Notes: a model not told the origin generated them from the letters alone. Shown: positions 3,904-58,532, numbered from the stretch's first letter. The stretch: 64,000 nt of DNA from Phyllobates terribilis (GCF_046119375.1 NW_027362772.1:72850001-72914000), one strand, 5' to 3'. Program-made: numbers and translations.

Positions 3904-4086
3904 TCAAATTAAAGGTAAAGGGAGCATGGCTTTTTCCAAGCCCCCCGGATCCTTTCCACTACGGTAACTCTCGTCATCGTCCATTTTCTTGCCGTGTTTC
4001 CGGAAGTACTTGTACCGCTGGACGTAGGCTTTCACCAAGTTATTTACTTTCACCGGGTTGATTTCTCCACTTTTGCTATGGCAGAT
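3904..4086 (-). CDS. scaf1: SR-related CTD-associated factor 1, last coding exon ([34 protein letters not shown]...LPLPLI*)
   Basis: Acceptor ttccttacag, phase 0, stop TGA at 3906-3904. Matches the human SCAF1 C-terminal CTD-binding (SRI-like) segment. Confidence 0.96.
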
Positions 4087-4308
4087 CTGTAAGGAACAGA
4101 AAACAATTAGTTACATGACTTCTAAAAATGAAAAGAAATTATGACTCTTGGAAGAAGGGAAGGAAAAAAAAAGGGCAAAAATTAAAAAGGATTTAAAAAG
4201 GGGTTTCGAACAGTATTTACAGCGATTGTTTATTGTTCATTTGTTCCATAAATGCAAAGTTAAGCAAATTTTCTTCTATTTTGCCGCTGCAGGCTACAAA
4301 TAAGTGTG

Positions 4309-4690
4309 TGTACATGAAGGGAAAATAAGCAGAGAATAGAAGCTGTGCTGACAAATTAGCTAATAAGGATGGAAGCATCTTGTGTACATAAAGAGCTCAC
4401 ATCCAGCCTATATTACTGGGAGGGACACTCACACAAAGAGTAAAGGATCAGTGTACATGACAGGAAAATTAGCAGAGGATAGAAGATGTGCTGACATATT
4501 ATCTAATAAAGATGGCAGCACCTTGTGTACATAAAGAGCTCACATCCAGCCTACATTACTGGGAGGGACACTCACACACAAGAATAGAGAATGAGTGTAT
4601 ATGACAGGACAATAAGTACAGTATAGAAGCTGAGCTGACACATAAGCTAATGAACCCTGTATACAACACAGATCACATCCAGCCTGTATT
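4309..4690. repeat. Tandem repeat, ~143-bp unit, about 2.7 copies, in the last scaf1 intron
   Basis: GTGTA(C/T)ATGA at 4309, 4451 and 4595, with a shared AGAGCTCACATCCAGCC...TTACTGGGAGGGACACTCAC. Confidence 0.85.
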
Positions 4691-4945
4691 ACTAGAAGAA
4701 TAAAATCTGAAGCTTGGAACAGGCTGCAAACTGCATATCCAGATGGTCTGAAAATGAATGAAGGAATGAAGATTGCATAGTAAAACTTAGTGAAGGTAAC
4801 AACTAACATGTAGGAATCATTTTTTCATTTCCATAAGCATAGGAGCTTTCTATTGTATCCCTACTCCTGTCAGTGGACACGCTCAGGCAGTAGCAGCGAG
4901 CTCTTGTTTTCCTGAGCATATAATATGTATTATATATATGTATAA

Positions 4946-5100
4946 TCTAGAATGTAAGCCCGCAAGGGCAGGGTCCTCTTCCCTCTACACCAGTCTATCA
5001 TTGTTAGTTCATTCACTGTAAGTGATATCTGTATCTGGTATGTAACCCCTTCTTATGTACAGCACCACGGAATCAATGGCGCTATATAAATAATAATAAT
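4946..5100 (+). mobile_element. L2-clade LINE 3' end fragment
   Basis: TCTAGAATGTAAGCCCGCAAGGGCAGGGTCC...GGCGCTATATAAATAATAATAAT; related to the L2 3' end at 27826-28008 in the opposite orientation. Confidence 0.75.
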
Positions 5101-5252
5101 ATGACATCCCATAAAGGAGTTAATATCTCCATCACTGCGACACAGTGGAATTAAGAGATTAGTTCAGCTGACTACGTCCAGCGAGTCTTGATATAATTAG
5201 ATTATTAGAGTATTTGCACTTACAGAGGGATAAATCGAGCAGATAAACCCAC

Positions 5253-5381
5253 CTTATGTACAGCCTTTCTTAGTATATCTTTATAATCTTCCTTCGTGAT
5301 CTCTTTCCTCTGGTAATATGGCTTAATGGCCAGTTTCACCTCTTCCACGGCTCTCTCCTGTGTATGCAGCTTCTTCAAATA
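5253..5381 (-). CDS. scaf1: scaf1 coding exon 9 of 10 ([43 protein letters not shown])
   Basis: AG/GT flanks, 129 nt, phase 0/0, near-identical to the human SCAF1 exon. Confidence 0.97.
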
Positions 5382-5492
5382 CTGATTGGGAGAAAATAAA
5401 ATAAAAAAATAAATAAAAAGTAAAAAAAAAAAAAAAAAAAAAAAAGACTCTGCCCTATTGAATGGAGCTCACTAACGAGCGCTTCGTACTAC

Positions 5493-5753
5493 CTTGTCCG
5501 TGTCTCCTCTGCCTTCGGAGCTTGTGCTGCCTTCCCGTTTTCCCAGCTCATTGATGGATGTAGTGTTGAAGAAGGAGCTGCAGGTCGGGCCGGGCAATGA
5601 TAGCGAGTTTAGACCTGTGATTCCAGTAGGGGTAGGAGGGCTGGAGCTACTACTGAGGGGTAGACCGCCGAGAAGATATGGAGGCGCCGAATGACCCATG
5701 ACGGGTGGAGGCTGGTTCACCAATGAGGTAGATGGCTTGCTGTGACTGAGGAT
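5493..5753 (-). CDS. scaf1: scaf1 coding exon 8 of 10 (ILSHSKPSTSL...KREGSTSSEGRGDTDK)
   Basis: Acceptor ccccaatag, donor gtagta, 261 nt. ILSH start and EGRGDTDK end as in human SCAF1. Confidence 0.95.
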
Positions 5754-5951
5754 CTATTGGGGAAAAAAATTTTATGCATTTTTTTATTGTCTATAGATAT
5801 ATGTCTTACTTTCTGTATAATATATATATTTTTTGTATATAAAAAAAATATATTAATTATATTTGTATAATATTTTATATATATATATATTATAAGAAAT
5901 AAATAAAAATTGTGTATTTTTTATTATTCTTTACTTTTTTGTATAATATAT

Positions 5952-5982
<31 letters not shown>

Positions 5983-5998
5983 CACACATACACACACA

Positions 5999-6204
5999 CA
6001 GGTGCATCTCACTAAATTATAATATTTACAAAAAGTTAATTTATTTCAGTTCTTCAATACAAAAAGTGAAACTCATATTATATAGAGTCATTACACACAC
6101 AGTGATCTATTTCAAGTGATTATTTCTGTTAATGTTGATGATTATGTCTTACAGAACTGAAATAAATTAACTTTTTGATGTTCTAATTTAGTGAGATGCA
6201 CCTG
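5999..6204. mobile_element. Internally deleted Tc1-type element (MITE-like)
   Basis: Inverted ends CAGGTGCATCTCACTAAATT... / ...AATTTAGTGAGATGCACCTG followed by TA; same family as the fragment at 55307. Confidence 0.8.
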
Positions 6205-6239
6205 TATATTATCAAAAAAAAATAAAAATTATATATATA

Positions 6240-7860
6240 CAGTACAGACCAAAAGTTTGGACACACCTTCTCATTTAAAGATTTCTCTGTATTTTCATGA
6301 CTATGAAAATTGTACATTCACACTGAAGGCATCAAAACTATGAATTAACACATGTGGAATTATATACTTAACAAAAAAGTGTGAAACAACTGAAAATATG
6401 TCTTATATTCTAGGTTCTTCAAAGTAGCCACCTTTTGCTTTGATGACTGCTTTGCACACTCTTGGCATTCTCTTGATGAGCTTCAAGAAGTAGTCACCGG
6501 AAATGGTTTTCATTTCACAGGTGTGCGCTGTCAGGTGTAATAAGTGGGATTTCTTGCCTTATAAATGGGGTTGGGACCATCAGTTGTGTTGTGCAGAAGT
6601 CTGGTGGATACACAGCTGATAGTCCTACTGAATAGACTGTTAGAATTTGTATTATGGCAAGAAAAAAGCAACTAAGTAAAGAAAAACGAGTGGCCATCAT
6701 TACTCTAAGAAATGAAGGTCAGTCAGTCCGAAAAATTAGGAAAACTTTGAAAGTGTCCCAAAGTGCAGTTGCAAAAACCATCAAGTGCTACAAAGAAAGT
6801 GGCTCACATGAGGACCGCCCCAGGAACGGAAGACCAAGAGTCACCTCTGCTTCTGAGGATAAGTTTATCCGAGTCACCAGCCTCAGAAATCGCAGGTTAA
6901 CAGCAGCTCAGATTAGAGACCAGGTCAATGCCACACAGAGTTCTAGCAGCTAACACATCTCTACAACAACTGTTAAGAGGAGACTTTGTGCAGCAGTCCT
7001 TCATGGTAAAATAGCTGCTAGGAAACCACTGCTAAGAACAAGCAACAAGCAGAAGAGACTTGTTTGGGCTAAAGAACACAAGGAATGGACATTAGACCAG
7101 TGGAAATCTGTGCTTTGGTCTGATGAGTCCAAATTTGAGATCTTTGGTTCCAACCACCGTGTCTTTGTGCGACGCAGAAAAGGTGAACGATGGACTCTAC
7201 ATGCTTGGTTCCCACCGTGAAGCATGGAGGAGGAGGTGTGATGGTGTGGGGGTGCTTTGCTGGTGACACTGTTGGGGATTTATTCAAAATTGAAGGCATA
7301 CTGAACCAGCATGGCTACTACAGCATCTTGCAGCAGCATGCTATTCCATCCGGTTTGCGTTTAGTTGGACCATCATTTATTTTTCAATGACCCCAAACAC
7401 ACCTCCAGGCTGTGTAAGGGCTATTTGACCAAGAAGGAGAGTGATGGGGTGCTACGCCAGATGACTTGGCCTCCACAGTCACCAGACCTGAACCCAATCG
7501 AGATGGTTTGGGGTGAGCTGGACCGCAGAGTGAAGGCAAAAGGGCCAACAAGTGCTAAGCATCTCTGGGAACTCCTTCAAGATTGTTGGAAGACCATTTC
7601 CGGTGACTACCTCTTGAAGCTCATCAAGAGAATGCCAAGAGTGTGCAAAGCAGTCATCAAAGCAAAAGGTGGCTACTTTGAAGAACCTAGAATATAAGAC
7701 ATATTTTCAGTTGTTTCACACTTTTTTGTTAAGTATATAATTCCACATGTGTTAATTCATAGTTTTGATGCCTTCAGTGTGAATGTACAATTTTCAAAGT
7801 CATGAAAATACAAAAAAATCTTTAAATGAGAAGGTGTGTCCAAACTGTTGGTCTGTACTG
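6240..7860 (+). mobile_element. Full-length Tc1 (DD34E) transposon, 1621 bp, defective
   Basis: TIRs CAGTACAGACCAAAAGTTTGGACACACCTTCTCATTT at both ends, ~200 bp long, with TA target duplication inside a TA microsatellite. Confidence 0.95.
6654..7697 (+). pseudogene. Disrupted Tc1 transposase
   Basis: MARKKQLSKEKRVAIITLRNEG..., WSDESKF, TVKHGGGGVMVWG, SPDLNPIE. In-frame stop at 6951-6953, a frameshift near 7190, and a short deletion near 7385 that removes the QDN Asp. Confidence 0.92.
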
Positions 7861-8100
7861 TATATATATCTCTATCTATCTATATATACACACACACATC
7901 TATATATCTATCTATATATCTATATATATATCTATATATATATATATATTATACAAAAATATATATATAATTTTTTGTATAATGTACTATATATAATATA
8001 TATATATAAAAAATATATACATATTAATATGGTACATATATACATTATATTATATATATATATATATATACAGACACACGCACGCACGCACACGCTCACT
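7861..8100. repeat. Compound TA/TC/CA microsatellite
   Basis: Direct reading of the sequence. Confidence 0.9.
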
Positions 8101-8196
8101 GACTCACTTTCTATAAGGTACAGTACAAGTACATTTTCCTATAATCCTGTAAAGCCAAAGCACCATACTTTACACTTCCACATGCAGCATCTCTAC

Positions 8197-8279
8197 CTGA
8201 TTGGTAGCTTGGATTAGCTCCTGTGCCTTGGCTCTGCTCGCCATGTTAGCTTCTTCCATCTTGAAGAGCAAAGCCGTCA
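8197..8279 (-). CDS. scaf1: scaf1 coding exon 7 of 10 ((L)[27 protein letters not shown])
   Basis: Acceptor tttttcag, donor gtagag, 83 nt, phase 1/0; near-identical to human. Confidence 0.97.
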
Positions 8280-8742
8280 CTGAAAAAGCAAGACAAAATA
8301 AAATTATTTCATACACACAAAAATCACTACAACCCCCATCATTTCTATATTTTATCATAATCATCAAATACAGAATAAAGTGCTCCGATAATGTAATATT
8401 TGCTCCCTTATCCATAGTTTTTCTTTATTCCCCCCTACAACACTCCTCATTGTGAGAATCCAATTCAGGAGTCTACAAAAGGCAAGAGACGGAACCTGAC
8501 GGCACCGGTACGGAAGCCATATTGTCGTAGAAATCAGCTATAAACATATATAGTTAATGCCGGCCGTACACAGAAGCCAAGTGTCAGCCAGAATGGGCGT
8601 TGATAAACTCATACATAAAACGTATGGGTTACGCCAGCCTTTTGGAGACACTGGCAATAACTTGGACATATTCGCAACCCCTCTAAAAACATATATACAC
8701 AAGATCGATGGTTGGGAACTGGAGTAATGCAAATTAACTTAC

Positions 8743-11700
8743 ATGCCAAAACGCCACTGGTGGCACAGTCCACTCCTGACTGCAGGTTCCACGACATTGG
8801 CGCGGGAGGTGGCGGAGGGGGAGGTGCTGGACGAGGAGTTTCTTCTTTAGGTTCTGAAATACTGTCAACCTCTAGGTCAATACTTCTCTCCGGGTCTGGA
8901 GGGAGCTCCTCCGGCATGAAGGACACATCTGGAGTCTTGCAGCTACTGTCTACAGTCTGCGAGTCAGGAGTAAGCTCCTGCTCGTTGGCCAGTTTGGGAG
9001 GACTGGGGGGCTTCACCTTTATCTCGGTCTTCTCAGTATCAGACCAGATAGGTTCGTCTTTGGCTTCAATCGGGCTCAGGATCTCCTGGCTGCAGCTATC
9101 TGCCTTAGATTTCTTCAGTGAGGCCTTTGTTTTCAGCTTCTTTTTTTTCTTCTCTAGTGTCCCCTTGGTTTTTATCAGAGTTCCTCCGGCTCCCGCGGTC
9201 TTTACTTTCTTCACACCGGTCTTGGTTTTTAAGCCTTTTATTTTCTTTGGCCGTAAGAGAGGTTCTTTTAAGTCTTCAGTTTCAGGCTTGGGCCGAATGC
9301 TCTTGATATCCGCCATCTTTTCTTCTGATTTAAGGAATGGAGAACGGCTCTCTCTATCCCGACTGAATTTCACTCCGATGGATCCGGCCTCTTTCACAGA
9401 GGTTGTACTGCTGACTCCTTCGCGGATCAAAACAGCCACTTTGGACTGAAGTTTGACCTTCCTTGTGGAACTTCCTTTGCCGTCTTTATGACTGGTCTTA
9501 ATTTTCTTTGGAGTCTTATCCTTTTCGGAGCGGACCTTTTCTCTGTCTAGCTTCATAGGCTCCGGTTCTGGGTCAGGGGCATCTTTGAATCGCTTTTTAT
9601 ACCTTTCCCGACTGTCATCAGTGTATGATCTATCCCGCTTCCTATCCCGTTCTTTCGAGATTTTCTGCCTACTGTCTCGATCTACCTCTACCCGCTTCGA
9701 GTCGAACTCCATGGGCAGCCTCCTTTTGCCAGAATCCGATTTCCCCGAATGCCTGTGAAAAGGCCGACTGCATTTACCATCTCTGTCATCAAGAGTTTCG
9801 CGGTCAGAATAGGTTTCAAAGCTTAGCCCTTCGGAATCGTAGAGAACTTCTCTTTTTCCAGACAGCTCAGGCGTGTGAAGCATTTCATCCCTATCCAATT
9901 TTTCTTCGGGGTTGACTGTGATAGTTCGCTTAATAGTAAAAAGATCGGCATTATTGAGCTCCTGTATGGAAGGTGGCACTACTGATCGACTGTCTCGCCG
10001 CCTCCGTTCTAGCAGCGGAGGATTTTCTATCTTGGGTTCATCCAATGAGTGCCTTGATCTTGGCTTCTCTTTATCCTTCCGTTCATTCGAGTGACGTGAA
10101 GACCGTCTGTCTCGATCCCGTTCTCTGGATTTCGAACGTGATCTTTTCTTCTTTTTCTTCGGCTCTGAGCGATGTTTATCCTTGTGTTTATCTTTTCGAG
10201 ACCGATCAGTACTATCAGAATGGGACCACCGATGCCTTTTCTCCTTTGATTTTGACCTGCGGCTTTTCCTCCTTTCAGCGGACGTACGAGAAGACCCTAC
10301 AGCGGATAAGCTGGTGCTAATAGAAGGTGACCAAGAGCGTGATCTCCTCCGATCTCTAGACCGAGATCGAGAAACCTTATTGTTCTTATAGTAAGAGCGT
10401 GATCTAGAACGTTTCCGCTCCTTCACGTCCTTTGCCAGTTTTTTTGTACTCGACCAGGAAGTTGATGTTCTTGGTTCTTTCGATCTTTTCTGTTCTCTTG
10501 ATCGCTTTCTCTCCCGTTTGTTTTTTTTACGACTATGTGAGCTAGAAGGCGAACGCGATTTTGACTGCTTTTTAGGTCTTGAGGGCGACGTTGATTTCTT
10601 ACGATACCTCTCTCTTCGTTGATTTGTGATCTTTCGTCTCAGGTCCAGCCCTTTCCATCGGTTATCCATTTGATTTTCGCCAAAATCGATCTGCAGGGCC
10701 CCTTCCTCATCTGAATCTGCATGCAAAGATAGAAAGTCATCTCCTTCGACCATTCTGAGTGGTCTCTCTATGACACGACAGCGGCTGCGGAACAAACGCA
10801 TTGGACTGAAACAATCTTCATCCGGCTGGACAATTTCTCCTTCTTCGATTTCGGAATCGTATTTCCTATCTGAGTCGTCGTCGCGATCCCTCCTTTCGGA
10901 GGAATGTCTCCGTTTGTGGCGTGATCTCGACTCGCTTCCAAGTTTGGCAATTTTTTCTAACCGTAAGTAGGATTTCATGTCTGGCTTTGCTAAAGACTCT
11001 AGCGATACTTTAATTTCGACCTTAGATTTGGATTCTGCTTCGGACGTGAAGTCTGTATTACGGTTGAAGTCGTTTCCGACGTCTACAGTAAATACTCGTC
11101 TTATTGGCTCCACAGAAGCATCCGGTGGACTGGCTTCGTTCAAGGTCGAATCCGCAGCTGGTGCTTCATCTACAGTATTTTCCTCGGGTACTTTCGGTGA
11201 AGATTCCTTTACCTCCACTTCATCTGTGGTGTCCAAGTCTATGCTGGAGCTAGGACTGTAAGGTTCAAAATCCAGTTTGGAAACGCTTCTGGGAGCCAAG
11301 TCGGAGGAATCTTTGGAAAGCCTTTGCTCATTTTTATTACCGTCCACTTCACTAGCGCCCTCCTCCCCATCAACCGCCTTAAATTTATCACTTTCATCAG
11401 ATTTTGCGCCTTCCTTGTTTTTGTCCATGCCAGGAAATTCTTGGCTTAAGCTATTTTCATTATAAATACCCGCCAGGGCTTCTGATATTCGACCTTCCGG
11501 ATGGGATTCACTGCCTATTTCGTCATCATCATCGTCCTCGTACGGTGAAGGGCTGCGTTCAGAGGAACTTGGATTAGAGCCGGTGGGGTCAAAGGGATCA
11601 TATTTTTGATCCTCCTCCTCTTCCATTTCCTTCTCTGGTGAGTCCTCATAAATGTAATCTCCGTTCACATTCTCCTCATCTGTTGGATGAAAAGGGTCAT

Positions 11701-12303
11701 AAATATCTAGGTCTTGTGATCTATTGGACTGAGCGCCGCCGCTCTCGCCAGCGGAAAGTGCGAGATTCTGAGAGGAGGGCGATGAATAGGCGGAACTTGA
11801 ATCTGTTTTTTCCAAAGAGCCTGCAGGTTGTGAATGTTGGTCGTTGGATGTGGACCCTTCTCCACCGAGTGGCCTTTGTTGTCCGTCAGATGCCCCAGTG
11901 CCATTTCCTAGAGCTAATCCTATAGGATCAGGTTGATTTTTCATAAATTGAGTATTGCTATTAATCAAATTAGTCCTGTTTGAGCAAAGTTTATTCTGAA
12001 CCCTAGACCCGGAGGAGGCATCTGATGGACCTTTGTCGGGCCACAGAAATCCCGCTACTGCAGAAGGACTTTTCAGCTGTAAAGTTCTGCCCAGGTCATT
12101 GCGTTGAACATGCTTTGAGTTCTGTATTTCATCACGTTTTGTGCTCGAGCTGGCTAAGCGCAATGTCCTGGACGTGCAAGATTTTAGTTTTGGAGGGCAT
12201 TTAAGGGGTTCCAGAGTTTCTCCAGTTCTTGGGGGGCTGGATAAGGTCTCTTTGATTGTCGATTGTCCTTCTGTGAGCTGCAGCCCTGAGGTACTTAGGC
12301 ACA
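8743..12303 (-). CDS. scaf1: scaf1 large exon (3561 nt) with acidic, RS-rich and lysine-rich regions
   Basis: Acceptor ttttgcag at 12304-5, donor gtaagt at 8742. Contains SCAF1 motifs DIYDPFHPTDE, QKYDPFDPTGSNPSSS, EIEEGEIVQP, DDFLSLHADSD, REVLYDSEGLS, KVKLQSKVAVLIREGVSSTT, PDSQTVDSSCKTPDVSF and SWNLQSGVDC. Confidence 0.97.
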
Positions 12304-12632
12304 CTGCAAAAAAATAAAAACGATAAGCAAAAATATCAGCAGGATATAAAAAGTAGCACAATACAATAAAACTTTTATAGTCTCTTCCAGGATCACAATA
12401 TTGAAAGCATATACTTATAGGCCATCAATATCAGGGCAGTTAGAACCAAACGCTTGCCGTTTAGTGCGGGCGCTGCGGCCCCTTTATTGTTTGTGTTGCT
12501 GTACAGTACCGCGCAGGGGATTGCAGCGCTGTTCCATTCAATAATAGTTCGAAGCCACCAATAATCGGAAATCAGAAGAGCACTGGAAAGGCCTTTAGTA
12601 AAACCCGTACATATGAAGCATGCCACACGCAC

Positions 12633-12757
12633 CCGATTTTTGGAATCTCCAGTGTCTGTCTCCTCTAAAGATTCCTGCTCGAGTACTTGCATAAGCTTCG
12701 ATGTCTCCGAGTCTGACCTCGGCCACAAATTCGACTTCATCCATTTCCTCCATCGAA
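12633..12757 (-). CDS. scaf1: scaf1 coding exon 5 of 10 (SMEEMDEVEFVAEVRLGDIE...HWRFQKS)
   Basis: Acceptor cctttaag, donor gtgcgt, 125 nt, phase 2/1. EFVAEVRLGD matches human ELVAEVRIGD. Confidence 0.9.
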
Positions 12758-13259
12758 CTTAAAGGGGAGAAAAATAAAGTGAAAAATCAAGTAAAAATTA
12801 CAAAACTCGCAGTATATCATGTGCGTTTTCTTAAGATTAAATGTCAGACTCAGCCTGAATTATAAACCTCTGACGACATATTGGATTCTCGGTGATCCTA
12901 AGACCAAGGATGTCCAAACATCATTTCTGAAGGAAAAACGTTTCCCGATGCGCTGTAAATGTACGTCATACTTCGGGCTCAGGAGCTGAGCAAGCTCCAC
13001 ACACATCTGGTGTTATATATCTGTCTCTCACACAGGGATCGGAGCTACCTCCCAAAGCGGTATTTAAGTGGTACAATCCTGACTGAGTGCAGTTTCAGAT
13101 GGCCACCCCACGGTGCTACTATAGGGTGCAGCCGGATTGCTATTTTTTGCTAAAAAGGTCCTTGTCGCCGCCATCTTGGTACTACTGTAAAGACCAACCC
13201 CAGGTTGCACTACATCATATTTTTCACTATATAGTGTATCAAATGACTGCAGGCTCAAG

Positions 13260-13620
13260 TGCCCCACAGGGGACTAAAAGTAAAAATAAAATTGTTGGAA
13301 TCATCTCGTCCTTTTCCCAGTTTAAAAAAAATAAAAAATCTATTTAAAAAAAATAAAAATAATTGATATCGCCAATTATCAAGATATAAAATGAATTACC
13401 CCCATGTAAAGGCTGTATATATTTTAAAAAAAACATTGAAATTGTCAAAAAGTGTAATAAAAGAAATCAAAACCTGTGTACCCCAAAACGGTATCAATAA
13501 AAACCATCAGCTTACCATGCAAAGAAAAAAAAAAGAACAAGTCCTCAATCAAAAAATAAAAAAGTTATGGCTCTTGAAAGAAGGGTAGGAAGAAAACTAA
13601 AGTGCAAAAACGAAGGAAAA
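13260..13620. mobile_element. Degraded AT-rich DNA-transposon remnant (hAT-like)
   Basis: Shares segments with 22040-22900 (AAAAAATAAAAAAGTTATGGCTC, TGTACCCCAAAACGGTATCAATAAAAAC); superfamily assignment is from memory. Confidence 0.45.
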
Positions 13621-13661
13621 GGTAAAAATGATTAGAACACAAACATCTTATTTAAAGTGAA

Positions 13662-14072
13662 TTAAAGGGAATCTGTGATCAGTTTTTTGCAAAGTAACCT
13701 GATATAGTGACAGAGACCCTGATTCCGGTGATGTATCTCTTAGTTTACCGAGTGCTGCAGTTGTGATACAATCCCGGTTTTCTCTGCTGTAGATCTAGCA
13801 GTGCTCGGAATGCTGAGCCGTGTATAACCCCGCGGCACAACACTGATTGGCTACTTTCTGTGTACACTGTAACAGTGCTGGGGGTGTGGTTGGACTAGGA
13901 GGCAAGAGACACCTAGTCCTGTTTGTGATAATCTCCTGATGATAAAACACAGATTGTATTGAAACAGCAAAAGACAACCTAATAAGTGACACATCGCTGG
14001 AATCAGGGTCTCTGCCCCTCCATAGTGCTGCTCTCGGAATACATAGCAAAAACTTGCTGACACATTCCTTAA
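13662..14072. mobile_element. T2/Kolobok-type MITE
   Basis: TTAA at both ends, AGGGAATCTGT...CACATTCCT termini, and an inverted arm CAGAGACCCTGATTCC / GGAATCAGGGTCTCTG. Confidence 0.8.
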
Positions 14073-14172
14073 AGATATGGAAACAGACAAGCATCATTTT
14101 TATCACCAAAGATTTCCTGCTACAGTAGATCCAGCGGACTTACTCAGGTACAATATGGCCGCGGATACTCAC

Positions 14173-14312
14173 TACAAATCTTCATATTCTAGACTGTCCT
14201 CTACAAAAGACTGGAGACGAGACCCTGGTGCGGCGATTGTACTACAAGTCCTTTCAGCATATTCCAATGCGCTAGACAAACTAAACAGCGGATCTGCCGC
14301 GGGTTCAGGAAC
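14173..14312 (-). CDS. scaf1: scaf1 coding exon 4 of 10 (VPEPAADPLFSLSSALEY...SLEYEDL)
   Basis: Acceptor gtcttttcag, donor gtgagt, 140 nt, phase 0/2. The phases join the neighbouring exons exactly; sequence is only weakly similar to human. Confidence 0.8.
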
Positions 14313-15194
14313 CTGAAAAGACAAAAATAGTGAAAAATGTCACTGCCTTGTTCTCTGCAACAAGGGTTAAAAACTGATAAAGTCCTTGAAATCTATCTAC
14401 TAATGAACAGGAAACCTGGCAGAAAAGGATATATCATTGTGTAAGTAAGAATGCTTACCACTCAGGAGTTGGAAAAGTTGCCTAAAAGTTACAGTTCCAC
14501 CTTCCATTTTGTAGTTATTTTTTAAAAAAATGTATAAATGGTATTAAAGTTGAAAAATGATTAAAAAAAAGTTTTGATATTTTCAACTTTTAAACACTAG
14601 GGGGAGCAGCAGCTGGCATTTGCCATGAAAACCTAGTGTACTGATAGCTCGCATTACGACTGCAGTAAAAGTGGGTGGGATCGGCTTGCGTGTATCTGAT
14701 GTCACTCCTCTCCTCCCCTTCTGGGTGTTTGTAAAAGAATAAGGTAAGATGAAGTTTAGGATCACAGAACGGAGACATTACTGGTGACTGCAAAGTGATA
14801 GTTTTTTATTGTACATCTTTACCAAAAAAAAAATGCAATTCTGGAATTTTTGATTTTTTTTTTGCTTTTGGTATTTCCCGCAGGAAAGAATTAATTTGAT
14901 ATTTTGATAGACCTTTATGGATGCAGCAATGCCACATGTTTCTTTTTCTTGTACATGAGAAAGCTGGTCCGGGGAACAGATACTGGGATCTGCTGCAACA
15001 GGAGGTGTTAAGGAGGGGCAGTTAGGCGGCGCTGTGTTGCCGATCCTTACAGGTATCTGAGCGGAGCAGTCATATCACTGCAGCACTCAGCTCACAGTAA
15101 GTAGACAGTTCAGCGGACTATATCACACATGATAAGATTAGATACACAGCTGTGATCTGAGAGGAGCCATCATGCCATTGCAGCTGCACCGTTC

Positions 15195-15777
15195 ATATCA
15201 CAGTACTTACAGGAGAGCGGTCACCAGGTCGGGGTACCAGGTCTGAAGCGATAATTTCATTCAGTGTCGTGTACTCGCAGCTATGGAAATCCCCTTCACA
15301 GAACTGGTGCCCAGACCTAGTGAGGTCTCATGAGTAATTACTGTGATCAGAGCGGAGCAGCCGCAATGACATGACGGCTCCACTAAGATCACAGTAATTA
15401 CCGGAGAGCACTCACCAGGTCCGGGTACCAGGTCTGCAGCGATAATTTCATACAGTGTCGTGTACCCACAGCTGGATAGATCACCTCCACAGCACTGGTG
15501 CCCGGACCTAGTGAGCTCTCACCAGTAATTACTGTGATCTCAGCAGAGCAGCCGCAATGACATGACGGCTCTGCTAAGATCACAGTAATTACCGGACAGC
15601 ACTCACCAGGTCCGGGTACCAGGTCTGCAGCGATAATTTCATCCAGTGTCGTGTAGTCACAGCTGTAGAAATCCCCTCCACAGCACTGGTGACAGTACCC
15701 AGTGAGCTCTCCCCAGTAATTACTGTCATCTGAGCAAAGCAGCCGCAATGACATGATAGCTCTGCTAAGATCACAGG
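15195..15777. repeat. Three tandem 191-bp units made of alternating inverted arms
   Basis: GGA(G/C)AGC..TCACCAGGTC at 15212, 15403 and 15594; each unit contains a ~55-bp arm and its reverse complement. Confidence 0.9.
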
Positions 15778-16047
15778 TGATAAAAGGAAAATGTAACTGC
15801 AGACGCTCAATTCCTCCAAGGCTCGCTTGGCCTCCATTGGAAGGTAAATGTCGGTGTTTACATCTGATATGTATAGATTAGCCTTACAACACGTGTCGCA
15901 GGTTTCCATTATACATGCACATTGGGAACTTTTTGCACCATATGTGTTTAACGGAAGCAAAAGATGAACCTGAGTCACAAGTCAGGAACTAAATCATGAT
16001 ATAATCTGCAAATAACTATAAAAGCAGAAAGGCCCCATCATACATAC

Positions 16048-16160
16048 AGAGTTTTCATTCTCAGCACGGAGACTATTTGGCTCTTCTGTGTCCACAGGTC
16101 TCTTCGATGGTTTCTTCTTACAAGCCTTTTTCGGTTTTGAACATTTTGATTTTTTTAGGT
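16048..16160 (-). CDS. scaf1: scaf1 coding exon 3 of 10 ((D)LKKSKCSKPKKACKKKPSKR...ENENS)
   Basis: Acceptor ttttgtag, donor gtatgt, 113 nt, phase 1/0, consistent with flanking exons. Confidence 0.82.
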
Positions 16161-16438
16161 CTACAAAATAATTAAAAAAAAAAAAAGTTTTAATACACCT
16201 CTTTACAGTAGAGCATCCGTAGGTAGCAGGTATACAGCAGTATGTCCACGGGTGGGTATTCTAATCCCGCTAGGATGTCATCTTGCAATACTAGACAGTT
16301 ATAGGCCAAACTTTACATGGTTATCCACCCTGTGTCTTCAGTTGGCCCCCTTACTGGATTCCAGGGGTCTACTGTGGGTATTATTGCACTTACAGGACAA
16401 AGGCTAAGAAATTGGTTTAAAAAAAAAACAAAACATAC

Positions 16439-16493
16439 CTGTAACCCTGTGGAGAGACTTCTTGCTTTCACTGACGACTTGCTGCAAAGCTTT
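16439..16493 (-). CDS. scaf1: scaf1 coding exon 2 of 10 (KALQQVVSESKKSLHRVT)
   Basis: Acceptor ttattgcag, donor gtatgt, 55 nt; similar to human RAIQQAVGSS. Confidence 0.85.
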
Positions 16494-16730
16494 CTGCAAT
16501 AAAATAAAGAAAAACTCCTTTACGCTAGATGATCCATGACTATACATCACCATATCAGGGTGAAGACCCCTAACAAGACACATGAACTTCAGAGGTCCCA
16601 GTGCGCTGCTCCTGCTTGTCTTACAATTGGACGGGTGCCATGTAAATATATATTGGGCTATATGTCAGCTGACGGCTGTGGGTGTCAGAAGCTGGTCCAA
16701 AAGTTCTACTTGCACGCTGAGATGACCCCT

Positions 16731-17000
16731 TTAAAAAGGGTTTTCTGGTTTCAGTTTAATTTAAAAGAAAACAAACCTTTGCCTTATTCACCCTCCCCAG
16801 GTCCAGCACTGTCCTGTGTCTATTATTGTCTGCAGCTCTGACGTCATGTCGATAGCTCGCAGATTGGCTGCAGTGCTGTCGACGTAACATCAGAGCTGCA
16901 GGTGATAACAGACACGAGAAGCAGCAGTGGAGACTCAATGTTGGACCGGGGGAGGATGAGTAAGATGATTCTGAAGGTTTTTTCGAAACTGGAAATAAAA
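16731..17000. mobile_element. TTAA-type MITE remnant
   Basis: TTAAAAAGGGTTTTC start; inverted arms CTGCAGCTCTGACGTCA / TAACATCAGAGCTGCAG and TCACCCTCCCCAGGTCC / GGACCGGGGGAGGATGA. Confidence 0.6.
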
Positions 17001-17086
17001 GTGAATGTAAAGCGTTGCAGAATATGATGGCACTATATAAGCAAAGCAAAATAAATAATAATAAGGAATGAGCCGTGTAGGATTAC

Positions 17087-17233
17087 CAGAATAATGTGTC
17101 CGGGGCAGAGCTCTTCGGAAGGATCCTGTTCGGTGACATCGGCGGGGAGCTCGTGTTCATCCTCCAATGTTGCGGGTTCTGTTGTTACCTCCTCTTCCTC
17201 ACTACGTTTCTGTTCCGGGTGGTCTTCTGCCAT
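17087..17233 (-). CDS. scaf1: scaf1 first coding exon (MAEDHPEQKRSEEEEV...CPGHIIL); exon spans 17087-17256 including 5' UTR
   Basis: Acceptor ctgttag at 17257-8, ATG in GTAATGG context, donor gtaatc phase 0. Acidic N-terminus ending HIIL, compare human SAFIL. Confidence 0.88.
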
Positions 17234-29030: not shown

Positions 29031-29279
29031 CTCTGTTCACACGGAACAGACAGGAAGAGAAAGGCAGAGCCAGATACCAACAGGGTACTTGCAGTGAAGT
29101 AGCGAGTGGACCACAAACTCACAAACGGGAGTACAGAGACAACAAGCAGGAGTTAGGTACGAGTTCAGACTCTGCAGAAAAAGGAAGGGAACGGACATCG
29201 GACATAGAGGCAAAACAGGTAAAGGATAGGAGAGAGTTCAGACTGGAACTGAGTGTACGGAGGAGACCGACACTGCAGA

Positions 29280-32287: not shown

Positions 32288-33098
32288 TTAAAGGGAATCT
32301 GTCAGTAGGATCAACCTTCCTAAGCTGTCTATATGGGCATGTAGGTGATAGGAAACTGAATAAAATGACACCTTGATATCTGTGATCCGATGTATTATTC
32401 CAGAGAAATCCACGTTTTTCCTAATACAACCCCTGGCAAAAATTATGGAATCACCGGGCTCGGAGGATGTTCATTGAGTTGTTTAATATTGTTGAAAAAA
32501 AGCAATTCCATAATTTTTTCCCTCTGCTTGGTCTGAAAAAAATTACCCTTACTGAGTACCACATTTTTAATCTTGATTTCTTTTAGTGTTTCTTAAAGCC
32601 CTAAAGTTGCCATTTGAAATGACCTTAGTTTTGTGCCATGTCTGTGATCTGCTTTTTTTCAACAACATTAAACAACTGAATGAACATCCTCTGAGCCCGG
32701 TGATTCCATAATTTTTGCCAGGGGTTGTATGTAAATGAGCTGTTAAGATCTATGGCCCTGAGATAGATCTCCCTGAGAATCCGTCTCTAGAGCTTATTAT
32801 AAATGAAAGGGTGAGTTATCAATGTGAGACATGTAGATCAGGAGAGCAGACTGTCAGTCACTACATGTCTCACACTGGTTAAGCCCCCTTTCATGTAAAC
32901 TAATCTCTTGATGCATTTAGATCTATGTCCCACCCATAGATCTTAACAGCTAATTTACATATTAAGAAAAACATGCATTTCTCTGGAGTAAGGCATCGGA
33001 TCGCAGATATCAAGGTATCATTTTATTCAGCTTCCTATGCCCTACATGCCCATATAGACTGCCAAGGTGGGTAGATCCTACTGACAGATTCCCTTTAA
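32288..33098. mobile_element. T2/Kolobok-type MITE hosting a nested Tc1-type MITE
   Basis: TTAAAGGGAATCTGTCAGTAGGATC...GATCCTACTGACAGATTCCCTTTAA; arms inverted over more than 150 bp. Confidence 0.92.
32427..32727. mobile_element. Tc1-type MITE nested in the Kolobok MITE
   Basis: TIRs CAACCCCTGGCAAAAATTATGGAATCACC, TA TSD at 32425-26 and 32728-29; the rejoined flanks match the host's opposite arm. Confidence 0.92.
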
Positions 33099-33390
33099 GG
33101 TGCGATTCTTAAGGTCCAAGGATCAGGAAGGGAAGTAAATGATATTTAGTTAGCCAAGTGCTTTTGATACATTAGGTAAAAATAGCTGTTCAAGCTGTCA
33201 GTAACCAATTAGCTCTTTTTTTATCAGTCTTATGAAATGAAATAAAACCCTAGCAGATGTCTCATTGTCCATTACAGAGTATTGCACAAGTGCATCTTTA
33301 GATAAGTTAAAAATTAGGCTTTTTGCACATTGTGCCAGGCATCCGAGAGATGTCCATAATACAATAAATCTTTTTTTTTTTTTTTTGCAG

Positions 33391-33417
33391 ATGAACCACC
33401 ACTTCTCCATAACTTAA
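33391..33417 (+). promoter_or_regulatory. 8-codon uORF (MNHHFSIT*) at the start of the Kir6 coding exon
   Basis: A polypyrimidine acceptor T16GCAG ends at 33390; ATG 33391 to TAA 33417 ends 24 nt before the main ATG. Confidence 0.6.
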
Positions 33418-33441
33418 TAGCGTTTCTTGCATCGTACAACC

Positions 33442-34632
33442 ATGCTCGCTCGGAAGGGGCTGATCCATGATGAATTCTTGTTAACCCGAATTGCAGAAGA
33501 TAAGGATAACCATCCTCAATTTAAGACCAAGACTAGGAAAGCACGATTCGTGTCCAAAAACGGTGCTTGCAACGTGGCCCATAAGAATATTCGAGAGCAG
33601 GGACGTTTCCTCCAGGATGTGTTCACCACCATGGTGGACCTGAAGTGGCAACATAGCTTATTTATCTTCACGATGACATTCATCTGCAGCTGGATGCTGT
33701 TCGCCATGGCCTGGTGGCTTATCGCCTTCGCCCATGGAGATCTAGACCCCAAGCGCAGCTCTTCTATACCATGCGTCACTAACATCCAGTCTTTCACTTC
33801 TGCATTTCTCTTCTCCATCGAGGTCCAGGTGACCATTGGATTTGGAGGTCGTATGGTCACTGAGCAATGCCCACTGGCCATAACAGTCCTCATCATTCAG
33901 AACATATCTGGCTTAATCATCAATGCTGTCATGTTGGGTTGCATCTTCATGAAGACAGCACAGGCAAACCGGAGAGCGGAGACCCTAATCTTCAGTAAGC
34001 ATGCCGTCATAGCCTGCCGGGATGGCAAATATCGCTTTATGTTCCGAGTTGGTGACCTACGCAAGAGTATGATTATCAGCGCTTCAATCAAAATTCAAGT
34101 AGTCAAGAAGACCACAACCAATGAGGGAGAGGTCATTCCAATTTCTCAGGTTGATATCCAGGTGGAGAACCCAGTTGGGGCAAATTCCATTTTTTTAGTC
34201 TCCCCTCTTATTATAAGCCATACGATTGATGAGAAGAGTCCTCTTTTCCATTTTTCGGCCTACGACCTCGGCGACCAAGATCTGGAGGTGGTAGCAATCC
34301 TTGAAGGAGTAGTAGAGACCACCGGGATAACTACTCAGGCGAGGACTTCCTACTTGACCGACGAAATCCTGTGGGGCCGTCGTTTTGTTCCGATTGTGAC
34401 GGAAGAAGAAGGTCGCTATTCTGTGGACTACTCCAAATTTGGAAAAACAGTGAAAATACACGGACCCCAGTGTAGCGCTAAAGACCTGATGGAAGGCAGG
34501 TATAATCTAATTTCCAGGGGTCAACCTTCTAGATCCGCGAAGAAAAGGAAAGGTGACAGCCAACAAGCTTCACTACTAGAAAAGAAAATGGCCACATATG
34601 CACATCCTAATGATTCTTCATCTGATTCCTAA
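33442..34632 (+). CDS. ATP-sensitive inward rectifier K+ channel, Kir6 family (KCNJ11-like; probable Kir6.3/kcnj11l), 396 aa, intronless CDS
   Basis: MLARKG..., [29 protein letters not shown] (the Kir6-specific GFG filter), [50 protein letters not shown]; ATG in ACCATG context. Family certain, orthology inferred. Confidence 0.97.
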
Positions 34633-34912
34633 TGTTTGCCTTTTTTACTGCTAAGCAAATTATGTTTACTTTCCTCTCTTTTATATCATCATGCAAAGTG
34701 ATAACAGAAAAGGGAATATTTTTGTAATTAAGGTACTTTTATTCAGCAGGGGCAAACAATTAATGGCACTGGGAAAGCATCAAATTTGGTTCCAATTTTT
34801 AAGTGTCAACTTTTTCTACTTTGAATGGATATTTAAAATATATATATATCTATTGGTGTACATTAATGTGAAAACTGTTCTTTAATATTTCCTTTGCTAA
34901 TTTGTAATTGTC

Positions 34913-35279
34913 TTAAAGGCACCTGTAATTTTCCATAAATAAGTAATTTTTTTAACCTGGTATTAATGCCGCTGTTCTCCTGAATCCGACAATGTTTTTC
35001 TTGTCTTCCTACGCCTTTCCATTCCAGAGATATAGCCTTCTATAATCAGGCCTTTTTTTTTAGCCAACTGGGCATGGTCTACAAGGAGACCATCGCGGAA
35101 AAGTGTTCAAAATCACGCCTACTTGTATAAAAAAGACTAGATTTACACAATGGAAAGAAGGGGCAATATCTCAGGATTAGAGAGGCGCTGAAACAAAATA
35201 AAAACAACGCTGGATTCAGGAGAACAGCGGCATTTACATCAGATAAAAAAAAAAATGAAATTGGACAATTCCTTTTTAA
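34913..35279. mobile_element. T2/Kolobok-type MITE
   Basis: TTAA ends; arms AATGCCGCTGTTCTCCTGAATCC / GGATTCAGGAGAACAGCGGCATT; same family at 48578-48915. Confidence 0.85.
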
Positions 35280-37257
35280 ATTTAAAATGCTAGGCCCAAA
35301 TCCTGAGGCTGCACCACTGAGAGAATCTGATGACAACATTGTGTGATTTGTTTTAAATGACCAAATACACACATGCCCACACACACATACGCATGTATGT
35401 TCCACTGCTAAAAGGGTGTCTCATGCCTTGAATCCTTGATCCAGAATCCCGAATATGGGATCCCCCCTCTTTGTGTCAGTATAATAATGCTATTATCTCT
35501 GCAGCATGTGTTGCAGGATAAAATTGTAAAGGAACCCAAACAGAAAAGACTCTGATTTTGGTAGGATCGGTGCATGGGTGTGTCCTGACTATTTCCAGAC
35601 ATCTGCCATCAGAAGGATTGGACATGTTCTATTCTAACCTGCCCGATCATTTGTTCTCCTGGGATATAAACCAGTTTATTCCCTATCCTGAGAACACGTG
35701 TATGATCGACTAACATGTAAGTGCATAGAGGATTGGGAAATACCTAAAATACCTATTGAATGGGAAATGGGCACCTGAAGTCTAGACACAGGCACATAAG
35801 ACATTTAGGAAGTATTTTATTATATGAATCCACACAACCCCCCAATCAGAACTCAACAAGGAATAAAGTGCAGCTTCAGGCTTTGGGCCTGCACCATCAA
35901 GTGATAAGAATGTTAATACACACTAAAGCTTCTGTATATTTCTTCTAGTAGGTCTCTTTAAAGAATAAATGTTACTAGGACATAAGTGGCCAGTTTTGAT
36001 CCTAGTTGCAGGTTGTGTAGTCGGACTGTAAATAATTGACAAGCTTCGCTTTCTTTATCACGCTTGTAGAAATGTCTGTCCGATATGCACATTCATATAA
36101 AATCATTGCAGAGTATCAGGAGAAATCGCGATTGATGCTTTCACCAGCGGCCGGTCCGCAATCTTACCTGAATTTGGGACAGTGCAAAACTTTGGGCAAA
36201 ACTGGTGCAGGGTCTGAAGGGGCAGAGCATCACACAGTAACATGGTGCGCCATGCACCGACCCCCTTAGACCCTGCACGGGCCCTTGGTTTGTTTTTTCA
36301 TTGCATTTTTTTCCCCTATGTTCAGTCTTGGTTGCCTTTGTCTACATTGCATTCCTAACACAATTGAGTCTTATGTAAAGATTTCCTGGCCCTAAATTAA
36401 TATAAAAAAAATATTTAAATGCACCATTGATAGCAATAAAGATAGAAAGCAATTTTTAACTAATTGCCCTCATTACTCATATGACCGATCTTGCAAAGGG
36501 GCAACATTGGATTTGCAGGAGGCATCTCATCCACTAAGAGGTGCAGCTGTGCCTATGTTATAACCTATGGACAGGTCAAAGAGCAACTAAATATCGTTAT
36601 TGATTTTTTCATATTTTGCAGGTACTTGAAATGCCTGCAGATCGGTGGTGGTCTGGGTCCTGAGACCCTAACTGATCGAGCGCTAGACCCCCTGAGAAGT
36701 GTGCAGCTCAGCAGATTGGAGCGCACATCCCCTGTCTCATTGTGCACAGATTCATGAGAAAGCATAGGTTATGCTACGCTCCTGCCTGCTGAGGTGCGCA
36801 CTTCCCGGACCCCCTAAATATGAAAAAATCAATAACAAAGTTTAATTACTCGTTTAAGGAAATCTCCTCTTTGCAAAAAAAAAAACCAATATGCAACTAT
36901 TCACAGCAAATATCAAATTCACTATGGAGTAGCAATAACTACTGATCTTTGGGTAACGTGTATTGGAAAATTAAAGGGGGTGTCCAAAAAATAACATATA
37001 TCACAGCATATGTCTAATGATCACAGAACATAGGCGTTAAGTTCCCTGTGTAAATGGTGGAGTAGCAGGAGCATGTGCGATCACTGCCTCTCTCTCTGTG
37101 CGGTGCTCGCACATGCTCACTACTGCTCCAATCAGATTGAATTTGCTCCCTTATCCTTTTCGGCATTGTGAATGAGAGAATACATTTATCATCCATCCTG
37201 TCCTGTGTTATAGTGTTTTTTTTTCCGGGCTCCACATAAATTTCTGTAGCACATTGC

Positions 37258-40515: not shown

Positions 40516-42122
<1,607 letters not shown>

Positions 42123-58039: not shown

Positions 58040-58532
<493 letters not shown>

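What the first reader, a model, noticed from the sequence alone, without database searches (positions are those of the whole stretch)
33442..34632. A third Kir6 gene (Kir6.3-like) kept in a tetrapod, between scaf1 and rras
Seen: an intact, intronless Kir6 ORF flanked by divergent scaf1 and rras. Established: mammals have only KCNJ8 (beside ABCC9, 12p12) and KCNJ11 (beside ABCC8, 11p15); human SCAF1 and RRAS are head-to-head a few kb apart on 19q13.33 with no Kir6 between them; 11p15, 12p12 and 19q13 form a whole-genome-duplication paralogon; zebrafish has an extra member, Kir6.3/kcnj11l. The protein is a mosaic: a Kir6.2-length turret ([15 protein letters not shown]) and single-exon CDS, but Kir6.1-like segments ([40 protein letters not shown], no extra His in DLGDQDLEV). 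Inference: this is the 19q13-paralogon ohnolog lost in mammals, and the locus marks where it was deleted. It would imply a third KATP pore subunit in amphibians.
Basis: partly seen in the sequence, partly recalled or inferred. Interest (0 to 1): 0.82.

Follow-up and report, generated by a model that had tools for sequence, protein, structure and literature searches.

The report
Third KATP pore gene in frogs
This frog keeps an intact, transcribed third ATP-sensitive potassium-channel pore gene of the Kir6.3 lineage between scaf1 and rras; the lineage also occurs in sharks and coelacanth but not in the amniotes checked, so it is old rather than fish-specific.

Summary
Window 33442-34632 (+) is an intact 396-aa single-exon Kir6 coding sequence. 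It lies between scaf1 (minus strand, coding exons 17233 to 3907) and rras exon 1 (plus strand, 58401-58502).

- **Phylogeny:** an ML tree gives three gnathostome Kir6 clades. The frog gene falls with other amphibian "KCNJ11-like" genes, coelacanth kcnj11l and chondrichthyan genes (100/99 without the long-branched ray-finned sequences). Adding gar and teleost kcnj11l (Kir6.3) drops support to 87/94. Placing the amphibian genes with Kir6.2 is rejected (AU p=0.008).
- **Synteny:** a sawfish has the same irf3, scaf1(-), Kir6(+) order. In a turtle, RRAS and SCAF1 sit 3 kb apart with no Kir6 remnant.
- **Other Kir6 genes:** this frog species has a separate kcnj8. A toad has all three genes, including the abcc8-kcnj11 pair.
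- **Function:** the gene is under purifying selection (pN 0.10, pS 0.78) and is transcribed with a spliced 5' UTR. ATP-site, PIP2-site and GFG-filter residues are kept. The RKR ER-retention motif is replaced by KKRK in this frog and in most other frogs and the one salamander sampled.

The gene is already auto-annotated in RefSeq-type records. The only paper found that discusses Kir6.3's origin calls it zebrafish-specific. I class it as a new member of a known kind. Origin by whole-genome duplication is likely but not shown here.

The parts
33442..34632 (+). Single-exon coding sequence (396 aa plus stop) of a third Kir6 paralogue in the kcnj11l / Kir6.3 lineage
   Evidence: ORF and translation; Pfam IRK + IRK_C; Kir6.2 and Kir6.1 structures at E-175 and E-170; clade placement
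33371..33390 (+). Predicted 3' splice acceptor of a 5'-UTR intron: a T run followed by gcAG, with AG at 33389-33390
   Evidence: Sequence. RNA-run contigs carry 100-160 letters upstream of 33396 that do not lie anywhere on 30400-33395. The exact junction cannot be seen because the tool masked 33361-33395.
33391..33441 (+). 5' UTR part of the coding exon. It starts with a short upstream ATG (8 codons, stop at 33415-33417).
   Evidence: Sequence; contig coverage from 33396 onward
34633..36399 (+). 3' UTR covered without a break by contigs of four runs. The contigs run a further 650-910 letters beyond 36399, to about 37.05-37.3 kb.
   Evidence: table 8 (records 8, 24, 32, 16)
34546..34557 (+). 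Basic cluster KKRK at the position of the Kir6.1/Kir6.2 RKR ER-retention signal. The protein has no R-x-R anywhere.
3907..17233 (-). scaf1 coding exons (nine blocks; the large exon is about 8726-12364), divergent from the Kir6 gene
58401..58502 (+). rras coding exon 1 (34 codons, donor gtaagg at 58503). It is on the same strand as the Kir6 gene, 23.8 kb downstream of its stop.

Best explanation
This is a functional, transcribed gene for a third Kir6-type pore subunit of ATP-sensitive K+ channels. It belongs to a lineage as old as Kir6.1 and Kir6.2. That lineage is found here in chondrichthyans, coelacanth, amphibians and, probably, as gar and teleost kcnj11l (Kir6.3); it is missing in the amniotes checked. 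Its ancestral position is between scaf1 and rras, the region that corresponds to human 19q13.33. The most likely origin is the early vertebrate genome duplications that also produced abcc8-kcnj11 and abcc9-kcnj8, after which this copy kept no neighbouring SUR gene. From its residues the protein should form a weakly rectifying, PIP2-dependent, ATP-inhibited K+ pore. Its conserved N-terminal peptide suggests it pairs with a SUR subunit encoded elsewhere. In frogs and the salamander sampled, the arginine-based ER-retention signal has become a lysine-rich cluster, so export to the cell surface may depend less on SUR. Shown here: the gene, its clade, its synteny, purifying selection and transcription. 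Inferred: the genome-duplication origin, channel properties, the SUR partner and trafficking. The confidence of 0.8 applies to the shown part, a distinct and expressed third Kir6 lineage at an ancestral locus. I put the genome-duplication origin at about 0.65 and strict orthology to zebrafish Kir6.3 at about 0.75.
For: Identity: the intact ORF carries both Kir domains. Kir6.2 and Kir6.1 are by far the best solved-structure matches. In that alignment the GFG filter, N160, the ATP-site residues N48, R50, I182, K185, R201, Y330, F333, G334 and the PIP2 residues R54, R176, R177, R206 are all identical to Kir6.2. Phylogeny (84 sequences, LG+C20): Kir6.1 100/98, Kir6.2 100/99, amphibian clade 100/99, third clade 87/94. 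Without the long-branched ray-finned sequences, the amphibian + coelacanth + chondrichthyan clade is 100/99. AU tests reject amphibian genes + Kir6.2 (p=0.008). They also reject ray-finned kcnj11l with Kir6.2 (p=0.045), with Kir6.1 (p=0.024) or outside all other Kir6 (p=0.018). Distances: the window protein is 68% identical to toad Kir6.2 and 65% to frog Kir6.1, while toad Kir6.1 and Kir6.2 are 69% identical to each other. Synteny: in Pristis, irf3, scaf1(-), a 25-kb gap, then Kir6(+). SCAF1 and the Kir6 gene carry adjacent locus tags in Eleutherodactylus and Hymenochirus. In the turtle, RRAS(-), 3 kb, SCAF1(+), IRF3, with no Kir6 tblastn hit; none in a lizard SCAF1 locus either. Other paralogues: P. 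terribilis KCNJ8 is on a different chromosome. Bufo kcnj11 follows a 1588-aa ABC gene by about 9 kb. Selection: pN 0.10 against saturated pS 0.78 versus Xenopus. Expression: one contig per run in three runs, and two overlapping contigs in the fourth, cover 33396 to beyond 36399 at depth 30-63. Depth is zero, or about 1.5 in one run, over the unique upstream stretch 31000-31799, and the contigs' upstream letters do not match the genome there.
Against: The third clade including teleost Kir6.3 has only 87/94 support, and the AU p-values are near 0.05. Gar and teleost kcnj11l differ in neighbours (deaf1-like, CD59-like, TRIM) and have five coding exons. The relationships among the three clades and the lamprey gene are unresolved (86/39). 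The paralogon argument (RRAS/RRAS2, SCAF1/SCAF11, 11p15/12p12/19q13) comes from recalled map positions and was not computed here. A separate kcnj11 in this same genome was not found in the lists I could see. The runs are labelled 'RNA?' by guess and no tissue is known. No functional data exist for any amphibian orthologue.
Confidence: 0.8

Rival explanations
1. The lineage is ancient but arose by a single-gene duplication or transposition, for example a retrocopy of the intronless Kir6.2-type gene dropped between scaf1 and rras before the gnathostome radiation, rather than by whole-genome duplication.
For: The coding sequence is a single exon like kcnj11. No SUR-type gene is called within 10 kb in frog, Xenopus, sawfish, gar or smelt. 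The tree weakly groups the third clade with Kir6.2 and lamprey (86/39).
Against: All three lineages are about equally distant (65-69%). The flanking genes have paralogues near the other Kir6 loci in human (RRAS2 at 11p15, SCAF11 on chromosome 12; recalled, not tested). The Pfam family shared by SCAF1 and SCAF11 is seen on the window's scaf1.
Confidence: 0.2
2. The amphibian, coelacanth and shark gene is a third lineage, but teleost and gar kcnj11l (Kir6.3) is not its orthologue. That gene would be a fourth paralogue or a divergent Kir6.2 duplicate drawn in by its long branch.
For: The branch is long (0.54). Support falls from 100/99 to 87/94 when these sequences are added. They have five coding exons against one, different neighbours and an unrelated C-terminal tail.
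Against: Three alternative placements are each rejected at p<0.05. M85 is shared by all third-clade members against L in Kir6.1 and Kir6.2. Gar already has the gene, so it predates the teleost duplication. No ray-finned sequence in the sample groups with the core third clade apart from these.
Confidence: 0.15
3. It is a recent frog-specific duplicate or retrocopy of kcnj11, or the genome's only, translocated, copy of Kir6.2 or Kir6.1.
For: The coding sequence is a single exon. RefSeq-style names call it 'KCNJ11-like', and in Xenopus laevis simply 'channel 11'.
Against: It is 68% identical to toad Kir6.2. AU rejection p=0.008. Orthologues are found in caecilians, a salamander, coelacanth and sharks, at the same locus in a sawfish. 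It has a spliced 5' UTR. Separate KCNJ8 in this species, and KCNJ8 plus an abcc8-kcnj11 pair in Bufo.
Confidence: 0.02

Closest known systems
Zebrafish Kir6.3 (kcnj11l), Zhang et al. 2006, Physiol Genomics 24:290, as cited in PMC5367309
   Same: It falls in the same third Kir6 clade in the ML tree (87/94; alternatives rejected at p 0.018-0.045). It has no SUR gene beside it. It lacks the RKR/RXR signal at the Kir6.2 position. It shares M85.
   Different: The frog gene has a single coding exon, while gar and smelt kcnj11l have five (zebrafish itself was not examined). The neighbours differ (scaf1/rras against deaf1-like and CD59-like in a smelt). The C-terminal tail differs: K[KR]R[KR] and an ending like ...DSSSDS in amphibians, GWGLVRAGRGG...EEMSD in teleosts. 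The ray-finned branch evolves much faster.
Kir6.2 (KCNJ11)
   Same: It has a single-exon coding sequence and a similar length (396 against 390 aa). The N-terminal peptide, ATP-site and PIP2-site residues, GFG filter and N160 are all conserved. It is 68-70% identical.
   Different: It is not beside abcc8, it forms a separate clade (AU p=0.008) and it has no RKR motif. It matches Kir6.1 at 6 of 14 diagnostic columns.
Kir6.1 (KCNJ8)
   Same: It shares segments with Kir6.1 ([40 protein letters not shown]) and is 65-67% identical.
   Different: The Kir6.1 gene in this frog spans 12.4 kb and so has introns, and lies on another chromosome. Kir6.1 has the invariant ...SLRKRNSMRRNNS... tail, which is absent here.

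Membership tests
Inward-rectifier K+ channels (Kir / KCNJ) | IRK transmembrane domain plus IRK_C cytoplasmic domain | tested here: met
   Pfam PF01007 (E 4e-57) and PF17655 (E 1.5e-65), each covering nearly the full profile
Kir6 subfamily (KATP pore subunits) | G-F-G selectivity filter, N at the rectification site (N160), the Kir6.2 ATP-site residues (N48, R50, I182, K185, R201, Y330, F333, G334), and closest similarity to Kir6.x | tested here: met
   All these residues are identical in the alignment to Kir6.2 chain 7tys_A. Kir6.x scores E-175/E-170 against E-116 for the next subfamily. The protein sits inside the Kir6 clade at 100/100.
Kir6 subfamily (KATP pore subunits) | Arginine-based ER-retention signal (RKR) in the distal C-terminus that enforces co-assembly with SUR | tested here: not met
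   The window protein has KKRK at that site and no R-x-R anywhere. 23 of 25 frog and salamander orthologues also lack it at that site. Caecilians, coelacanth and skates keep RKR.
Kir6 subfamily (KATP pore subunits) | Octameric assembly with a SUR (ABCC8/9) subunit, inhibition by ATP and sulfonylurea sensitivity | not testable with these tools
   Only the conserved N-terminal peptide and ATP-site residues point that way.
Kir6 subfamily (KATP pore subunits) | Gene lies immediately downstream of a SUR gene (abcc8-kcnj11, abcc9-kcnj8) | tested here: not met
   The upstream neighbour is scaf1 on the opposite strand. No ABC gene is called within 10 kb in Xenopus, sawfish, gar or smelt. Toad kcnj11, by contrast, has one about 9 kb upstream. 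The intergenic DNA was not scanned for ABC remnants.
Third Kir6 lineage (kcnj11l / Kir6.3) | Monophyly with coelacanth kcnj11l and chondrichthyan 'KCNJ11-like' genes, excluding Kir6.1 and Kir6.2 | tested here: met
   100/99 and present in 100% of bootstrap trees. AU p=0.008 against union with Kir6.2.
Third Kir6 lineage (kcnj11l / Kir6.3) | Monophyly with teleost and gar kcnj11l, the clade that holds the characterised zebrafish Kir6.3 gene (a carp kcnj11l stands in for it in the tree) | tested here: met
   87/94 and 88% of bootstrap trees. Three alternative placements are rejected at p 0.045, 0.024 and 0.018. Support is moderate only.
Third Kir6 lineage (kcnj11l / Kir6.3) | Synteny and exon structure shared with teleost kcnj11l | tested here: not met
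   Smelt and gar neighbours are deaf1-like, CD59-like and TRIM genes, and those genes have five coding exons. The frog-type synteny is shared with a sawfish instead.
2R ohnolog of KCNJ11 and KCNJ8 | Location in a chromosome block paralogous to the abcc8-kcnj11 and abcc9-kcnj8 blocks | not tested
   The locus is orthologous to the amniote IRF3-SCAF1-RRAS block. Its paralogy with 11p15 and 12p12 is recalled knowledge (RRAS/RRAS2, SCAF1/SCAF11, KCNC, KCNA, PTH families), not computed here.
Processed retrocopy | Recent origin from a parent mRNA, with no introns at all, no inherited promoter and lineage-restricted presence | tested here: not met
   Spliced 5' UTR; same locus in a sawfish; deep clade; purifying selection.

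The most novel reading that the evidence does not exclude
In frogs and salamanders the third Kir6 subunit has exchanged the RKR ER-retention signal for a conserved K[KR]R[KR] cluster. It would then reach the surface and work as an ATP- and PIP2-gated K+ pore without a SUR partner, or with a different one. That would be a natural SUR-independent KATP-type channel in a tetrapod, and possibly in teleosts too, whose Kir6.3 also lacks the signal.
Probability: 0.2. Interest if true: 0.7.

Novelty: new member of a known kind. Interest (0 to 1): 0.45.

Why it matters
KATP channels are usually described as two pore genes, each paired with a SUR gene. The only paper found that discusses where Kir6.3 came from calls it unique to zebrafish and probably derived from Kir6.2 (PMC5367309). 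The evidence here makes it an ancestral gnathostome gene that amphibians still express and that the amniotes checked lack at an identifiable spot between RRAS and SCAF1. That gives Xenopus physiologists a third pore subunit to account for in KATP pharmacology and knock-outs. It also offers a natural experiment on the RKR trafficking signal, and it flags misleading names such as 'KCNJ11' for the Xenopus laevis copy. It is an annotation-level and evolutionary result, not a new kind of system.

Tried and rejected
- **Own-genome kcnj11:** I looked for a P. terribilis Kir6.2 in the hit lists and three 90% clusters. None was listed, so a separate kcnj11 is shown only for other anurans (Bufo, Rana, Hyperolius, Pyxicephalus, Nanorana).
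- **Xenopus neighbours:** the Xenopus laevis locus with 10-kb flanks held no scaf1 or rras exon by tblastn.
- **IRF3 in the window:** a tblastx search with the turtle and sawfish IRF3 regions found nothing. It presumably lies beyond the window start.
- **dS:** it could not be estimated because synonymous sites are saturated. Only pN and pS are reported.
- **The 2006 Kir6.3 paper** is not held in the library.
- **Literature:** searches for kcnj11l, 'KCNJ11-like', Kir6 + ohnolog, KCNJ11 + KCNJ8 + paralogon and Kir6 + coelacanth found no paper on a tetrapod Kir6.3.
- **Turret length** as a Kir6.2-like trait was rejected, because frog and coelacanth Kir6.1 are short too.

Full report
**1. What is in the sequence**

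Window 33442-34632 (+) is an uninterrupted 396-codon ORF. It carries both Kir domains: Pfam IRK (E 4e-57) and IRK_C (E 1.5e-65). Its best solved-structure matches are Kir6.2 (E 6e-175, aligned from residue 1 to 357) and Kir6.1 (E 1e-170). The next subfamily, Kir3.2, scores only 5e-116.

In that alignment the following are identical to Kir6.2 (residue roles are from established Kir6.2 literature, recalled):
- the Kir6-specific G-F-G filter;
- N160, the weak-rectification site;
- the ATP-site residues N48, R50, I182, K185, R201, Y330, F333 and G334;
- the PIP2 residues R54, R176, R177 and R206.

The N-terminal peptide ([20 protein letters not shown]) is also conserved.

**2. The genome and the flanking genes**

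The protein is identical to a database entry from a 324-Mb contig. That contig also carries Phyllobates terribilis SCAF1, so the window comes from that dendrobatid frog or a very close relative.

- **scaf1:** the SCAF1 protein maps to nine minus-strand blocks from 17233 (start codon) down to 3907.
- **rras:** exon 1 ([34 protein letters not shown]) lies on the plus strand at 58401-58502, followed by a gtaagg donor. It is 82% identical, including its variable N-terminus, to exon 1 of the turtle Ras gene that lies head-to-head with SCAF1.

Only the first rras exon is inside the window.

**3. Phylogeny**

I built an ML tree (IQ-TREE, LG+C20+F+G4 by PMSF, 84 sequences, 413 columns, 12 non-Kir6 outgroups).

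| Clade | Support (UFboot / SH-aLRT) |
|---|---|
| Kir6.1 | 100/98 |
| Kir6.2 | 100/99 |
| Amphibian "KCNJ11-like" (caecilians, a salamander, anurans) | 100/99 |
| Third clade: amphibians + coelacanth kcnj11l + 11 chondrichthyan genes + gar/teleost kcnj11l | 87/94 |
| Core third clade, without the long-branched ray-finned sequences | 100/99 (100% of bootstrap trees) |

AU tests:

| Constraint tested | p-AU |
|---|---|
| Amphibian genes + Kir6.2 as one clade | 0.008 |
| Ray-finned kcnj11l + Kir6.2 | 0.045 |
| Ray-finned kcnj11l + Kir6.1 | 0.024 |
| Ray-finned kcnj11l outside all other Kir6 | 0.018 |

No amniote sequence appears among the closest hits, although shark orthologues at 71-79% identity do. 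The window protein is 68% identical to toad Kir6.2 and 65% to frog Kir6.1. Toad Kir6.1 and Kir6.2 are 69% identical to each other. At 14 columns that separate Kir6.1 from Kir6.2, the protein matches Kir6.1 at 6 and Kir6.2 at 8. The branching order of the three clades and the lamprey gene is unresolved (86/39).

**4. Synteny**

- **Sawfish (Pristis pectinata):** scaf1 lies at 9,584,990-9,609,656 (-) and the Kir6 gene at 9,634,711-9,635,916 (+) of the same chromosome. An IRF3-type gene lies beyond the scaf1 3' end. This is the same divergent arrangement as in the frog.
- **Other amphibians:** SCAF1 and the Kir6 gene have adjacent locus tags in Eleutherodactylus coqui (011006/011007) and Hymenochirus boettgeri (012324/012325), and nearby ones in Pleurodeles.
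- **Amniotes:** in the green turtle the order is RRAS(-), a 3-kb gap, SCAF1(+), IRF3(-). tblastn with the frog protein finds nothing in that locus or in a wall-lizard SCAF1 locus.

The position is therefore ancestral for jawed vertebrates, and the gene is missing exactly there in the turtle.

**5. The other Kir6 genes**

P. terribilis KCNJ8 is a separate, intron-containing gene (12.4 kb) on a 209.7-Mb chromosome. Bufo bufo has the third gene, KCNJ8 and KCNJ11. Its KCNJ11 lies about 9 kb downstream of a 1588-aa two-NBD ABC gene on the same strand, which is the canonical abcc8-kcnj11 pair. Hyperolius and Nanorana also show all three genes, and Pyxicephalus has the third gene and Kir6.2. A kcnj11 of P. 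terribilis itself was not seen in the lists available to me.

**6. Is it a working gene?**

Against Xenopus laevis, pN is 0.10 while pS is saturated at 0.78. Orthologues stay 76-98% identical across amphibians.

In four public runs of the same organism (kind guessed as RNA for three of them), contigs match 33396 to 36399 with 0-1 differences at depth 30-63: one contig per run in three runs and two overlapping contigs in the fourth. The contigs continue 650-910 letters further. The unique upstream stretch 31000-31799 has zero depth, or about 1.5 in one run. The 100-160 contig letters upstream of 33396 do not lie anywhere on 30400-33395.

A run of T followed by gcAG ends at 33390, 51 nt before the ATG. 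Together these indicate a spliced 5' UTR and a 3' UTR of about 2.4-2.7 kb. The tool masked 33361-33395, so the junction itself was not seen. The tissue is unknown.

**7. The trafficking signal**

An earlier scan note on this same window (s1-204967) observed that RKR reads RKG. I confirm it and extend it:
- RKR is invariant in all 20 Kir6.1 sequences sampled.
- RKR or RRR is present in most sampled Kir6.2-clade sequences; a newt, a lungfish and a truncated gar entry lack it.
- In the third clade it is present in caecilians, coelacanth and skates.
- The window protein has no R-x-R anywhere.
- 23 of 25 anuran and salamander orthologues carry K[KR]R[KR] at that site instead.
- Gar and teleost kcnj11l lack it as well.

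Whether this frees the subunit from SUR-dependent ER exit is untested.

**8. Caveats on "Kir6.3"**

Gar and smelt kcnj11l have five coding exons, against one in frog, sawfish and lamprey. Their neighbours differ (deaf1-like, CD59-like, TRIM). Their branch is long (0.54) and their C-terminal tail is unrelated. Orthology with the characterised zebrafish gene is the best-supported reading, but it rests on the tree alone.

**9. Origin**

It also fits recalled map data: RRAS2 lies near KCNJ11 at 11p15, SCAF11 is on chromosome 12, and the 1/11/12/19 paralogon is known from the KCNA, KCNC and PTH families. I did not compute a paralogon test, so a single ancient duplication remains possible (about 0.2).

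**10. What is known, and the verdict**

The gene is already predicted in many RefSeq-type annotations as "KCNJ11-like". In X. laevis it is named simply "channel 11", and coelacanth has a "kcnj11, like" entry. PMC5367309 states that Kir6.3 is unique to zebrafish and probably derived from Kir6.2. None of the literature searches found a description of a tetrapod Kir6.3 or of its locus.

This is a new, database-visible but apparently undescribed, member of a known kind. Interest is moderate.

Noticed in passing
L003:10001-13443 and L004:10001-15437: Smelt and gar kcnj11l have five coding exons, a long branch (0.54) and a glycine/arginine-rich C-terminal tail. The frog, sawfish and lamprey genes have a single coding exon. 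This means either intron gain in ray-finned fishes or a different origin.
   Followed up: partly
tree (no window coordinates): No chondrichthyan sequence fell in the Kir6.2 clade. All 11 shark, ray and chimaera 'KCNJ11-like' proteins belong to the third clade, so cartilaginous fishes may lack a true Kir6.2.
   Followed up: no
cluster of P0105: Bufo gargarizans has four, and Bufo bufo at least two, Kir6.2-type proteins more than 90% identical on one chromosome. This looks like a local amplification of kcnj11 in toads.
   Followed up: no
window 34546-34632: The third-clade C-terminus ends in a conserved D-S-x-S-D-[SL] motif from skates (..SLSDL) to frogs (..SSSDS). The -SDL form in rays would fit a class I PDZ ligand.
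   Followed up: no
window 33391-33417: If the exon starts at the predicted acceptor, the 5' UTR opens with an 8-codon upstream ORF (MNHHFSIT) in frame with the main ATG and closed 24 nt before it.
   Followed up: no
window 45785-48581, 53825-55306, 56515-57664, 28563-29032: Large minisatellite arrays (30-bp unit x 95 copies, 21/42-bp unit x 35-69, 14-bp unit x 82, 37-bp unit x 13) fill much of the Kir6-rras and scaf1-Kir6 intergenic DNA.
   Followed up: partly
window 41200-41829 (-), 7365-7694 (+), 30482-30883 (-): Transposon debris: a Tc1/Sleeping-Beauty-type transposase HTH domain, a DDE_3 fragment and a reverse-transcriptase fragment. High RNA-contig depth at 30400-31000 and 32200-33200 comes from such repeats.
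   Followed up: partly
window 25061-25928: An assembly gap of 868 N in the scaf1-Kir6 intergenic region. It was left untouched.
   Followed up: no
P0022: The Xenopus laevis member of the third clade is named plain 'ATP-sensitive inward rectifier potassium channel 11'. This is a naming trap for anyone using Xenopus kcnj11 as the Kir6.2 orthologue.
   Followed up: no
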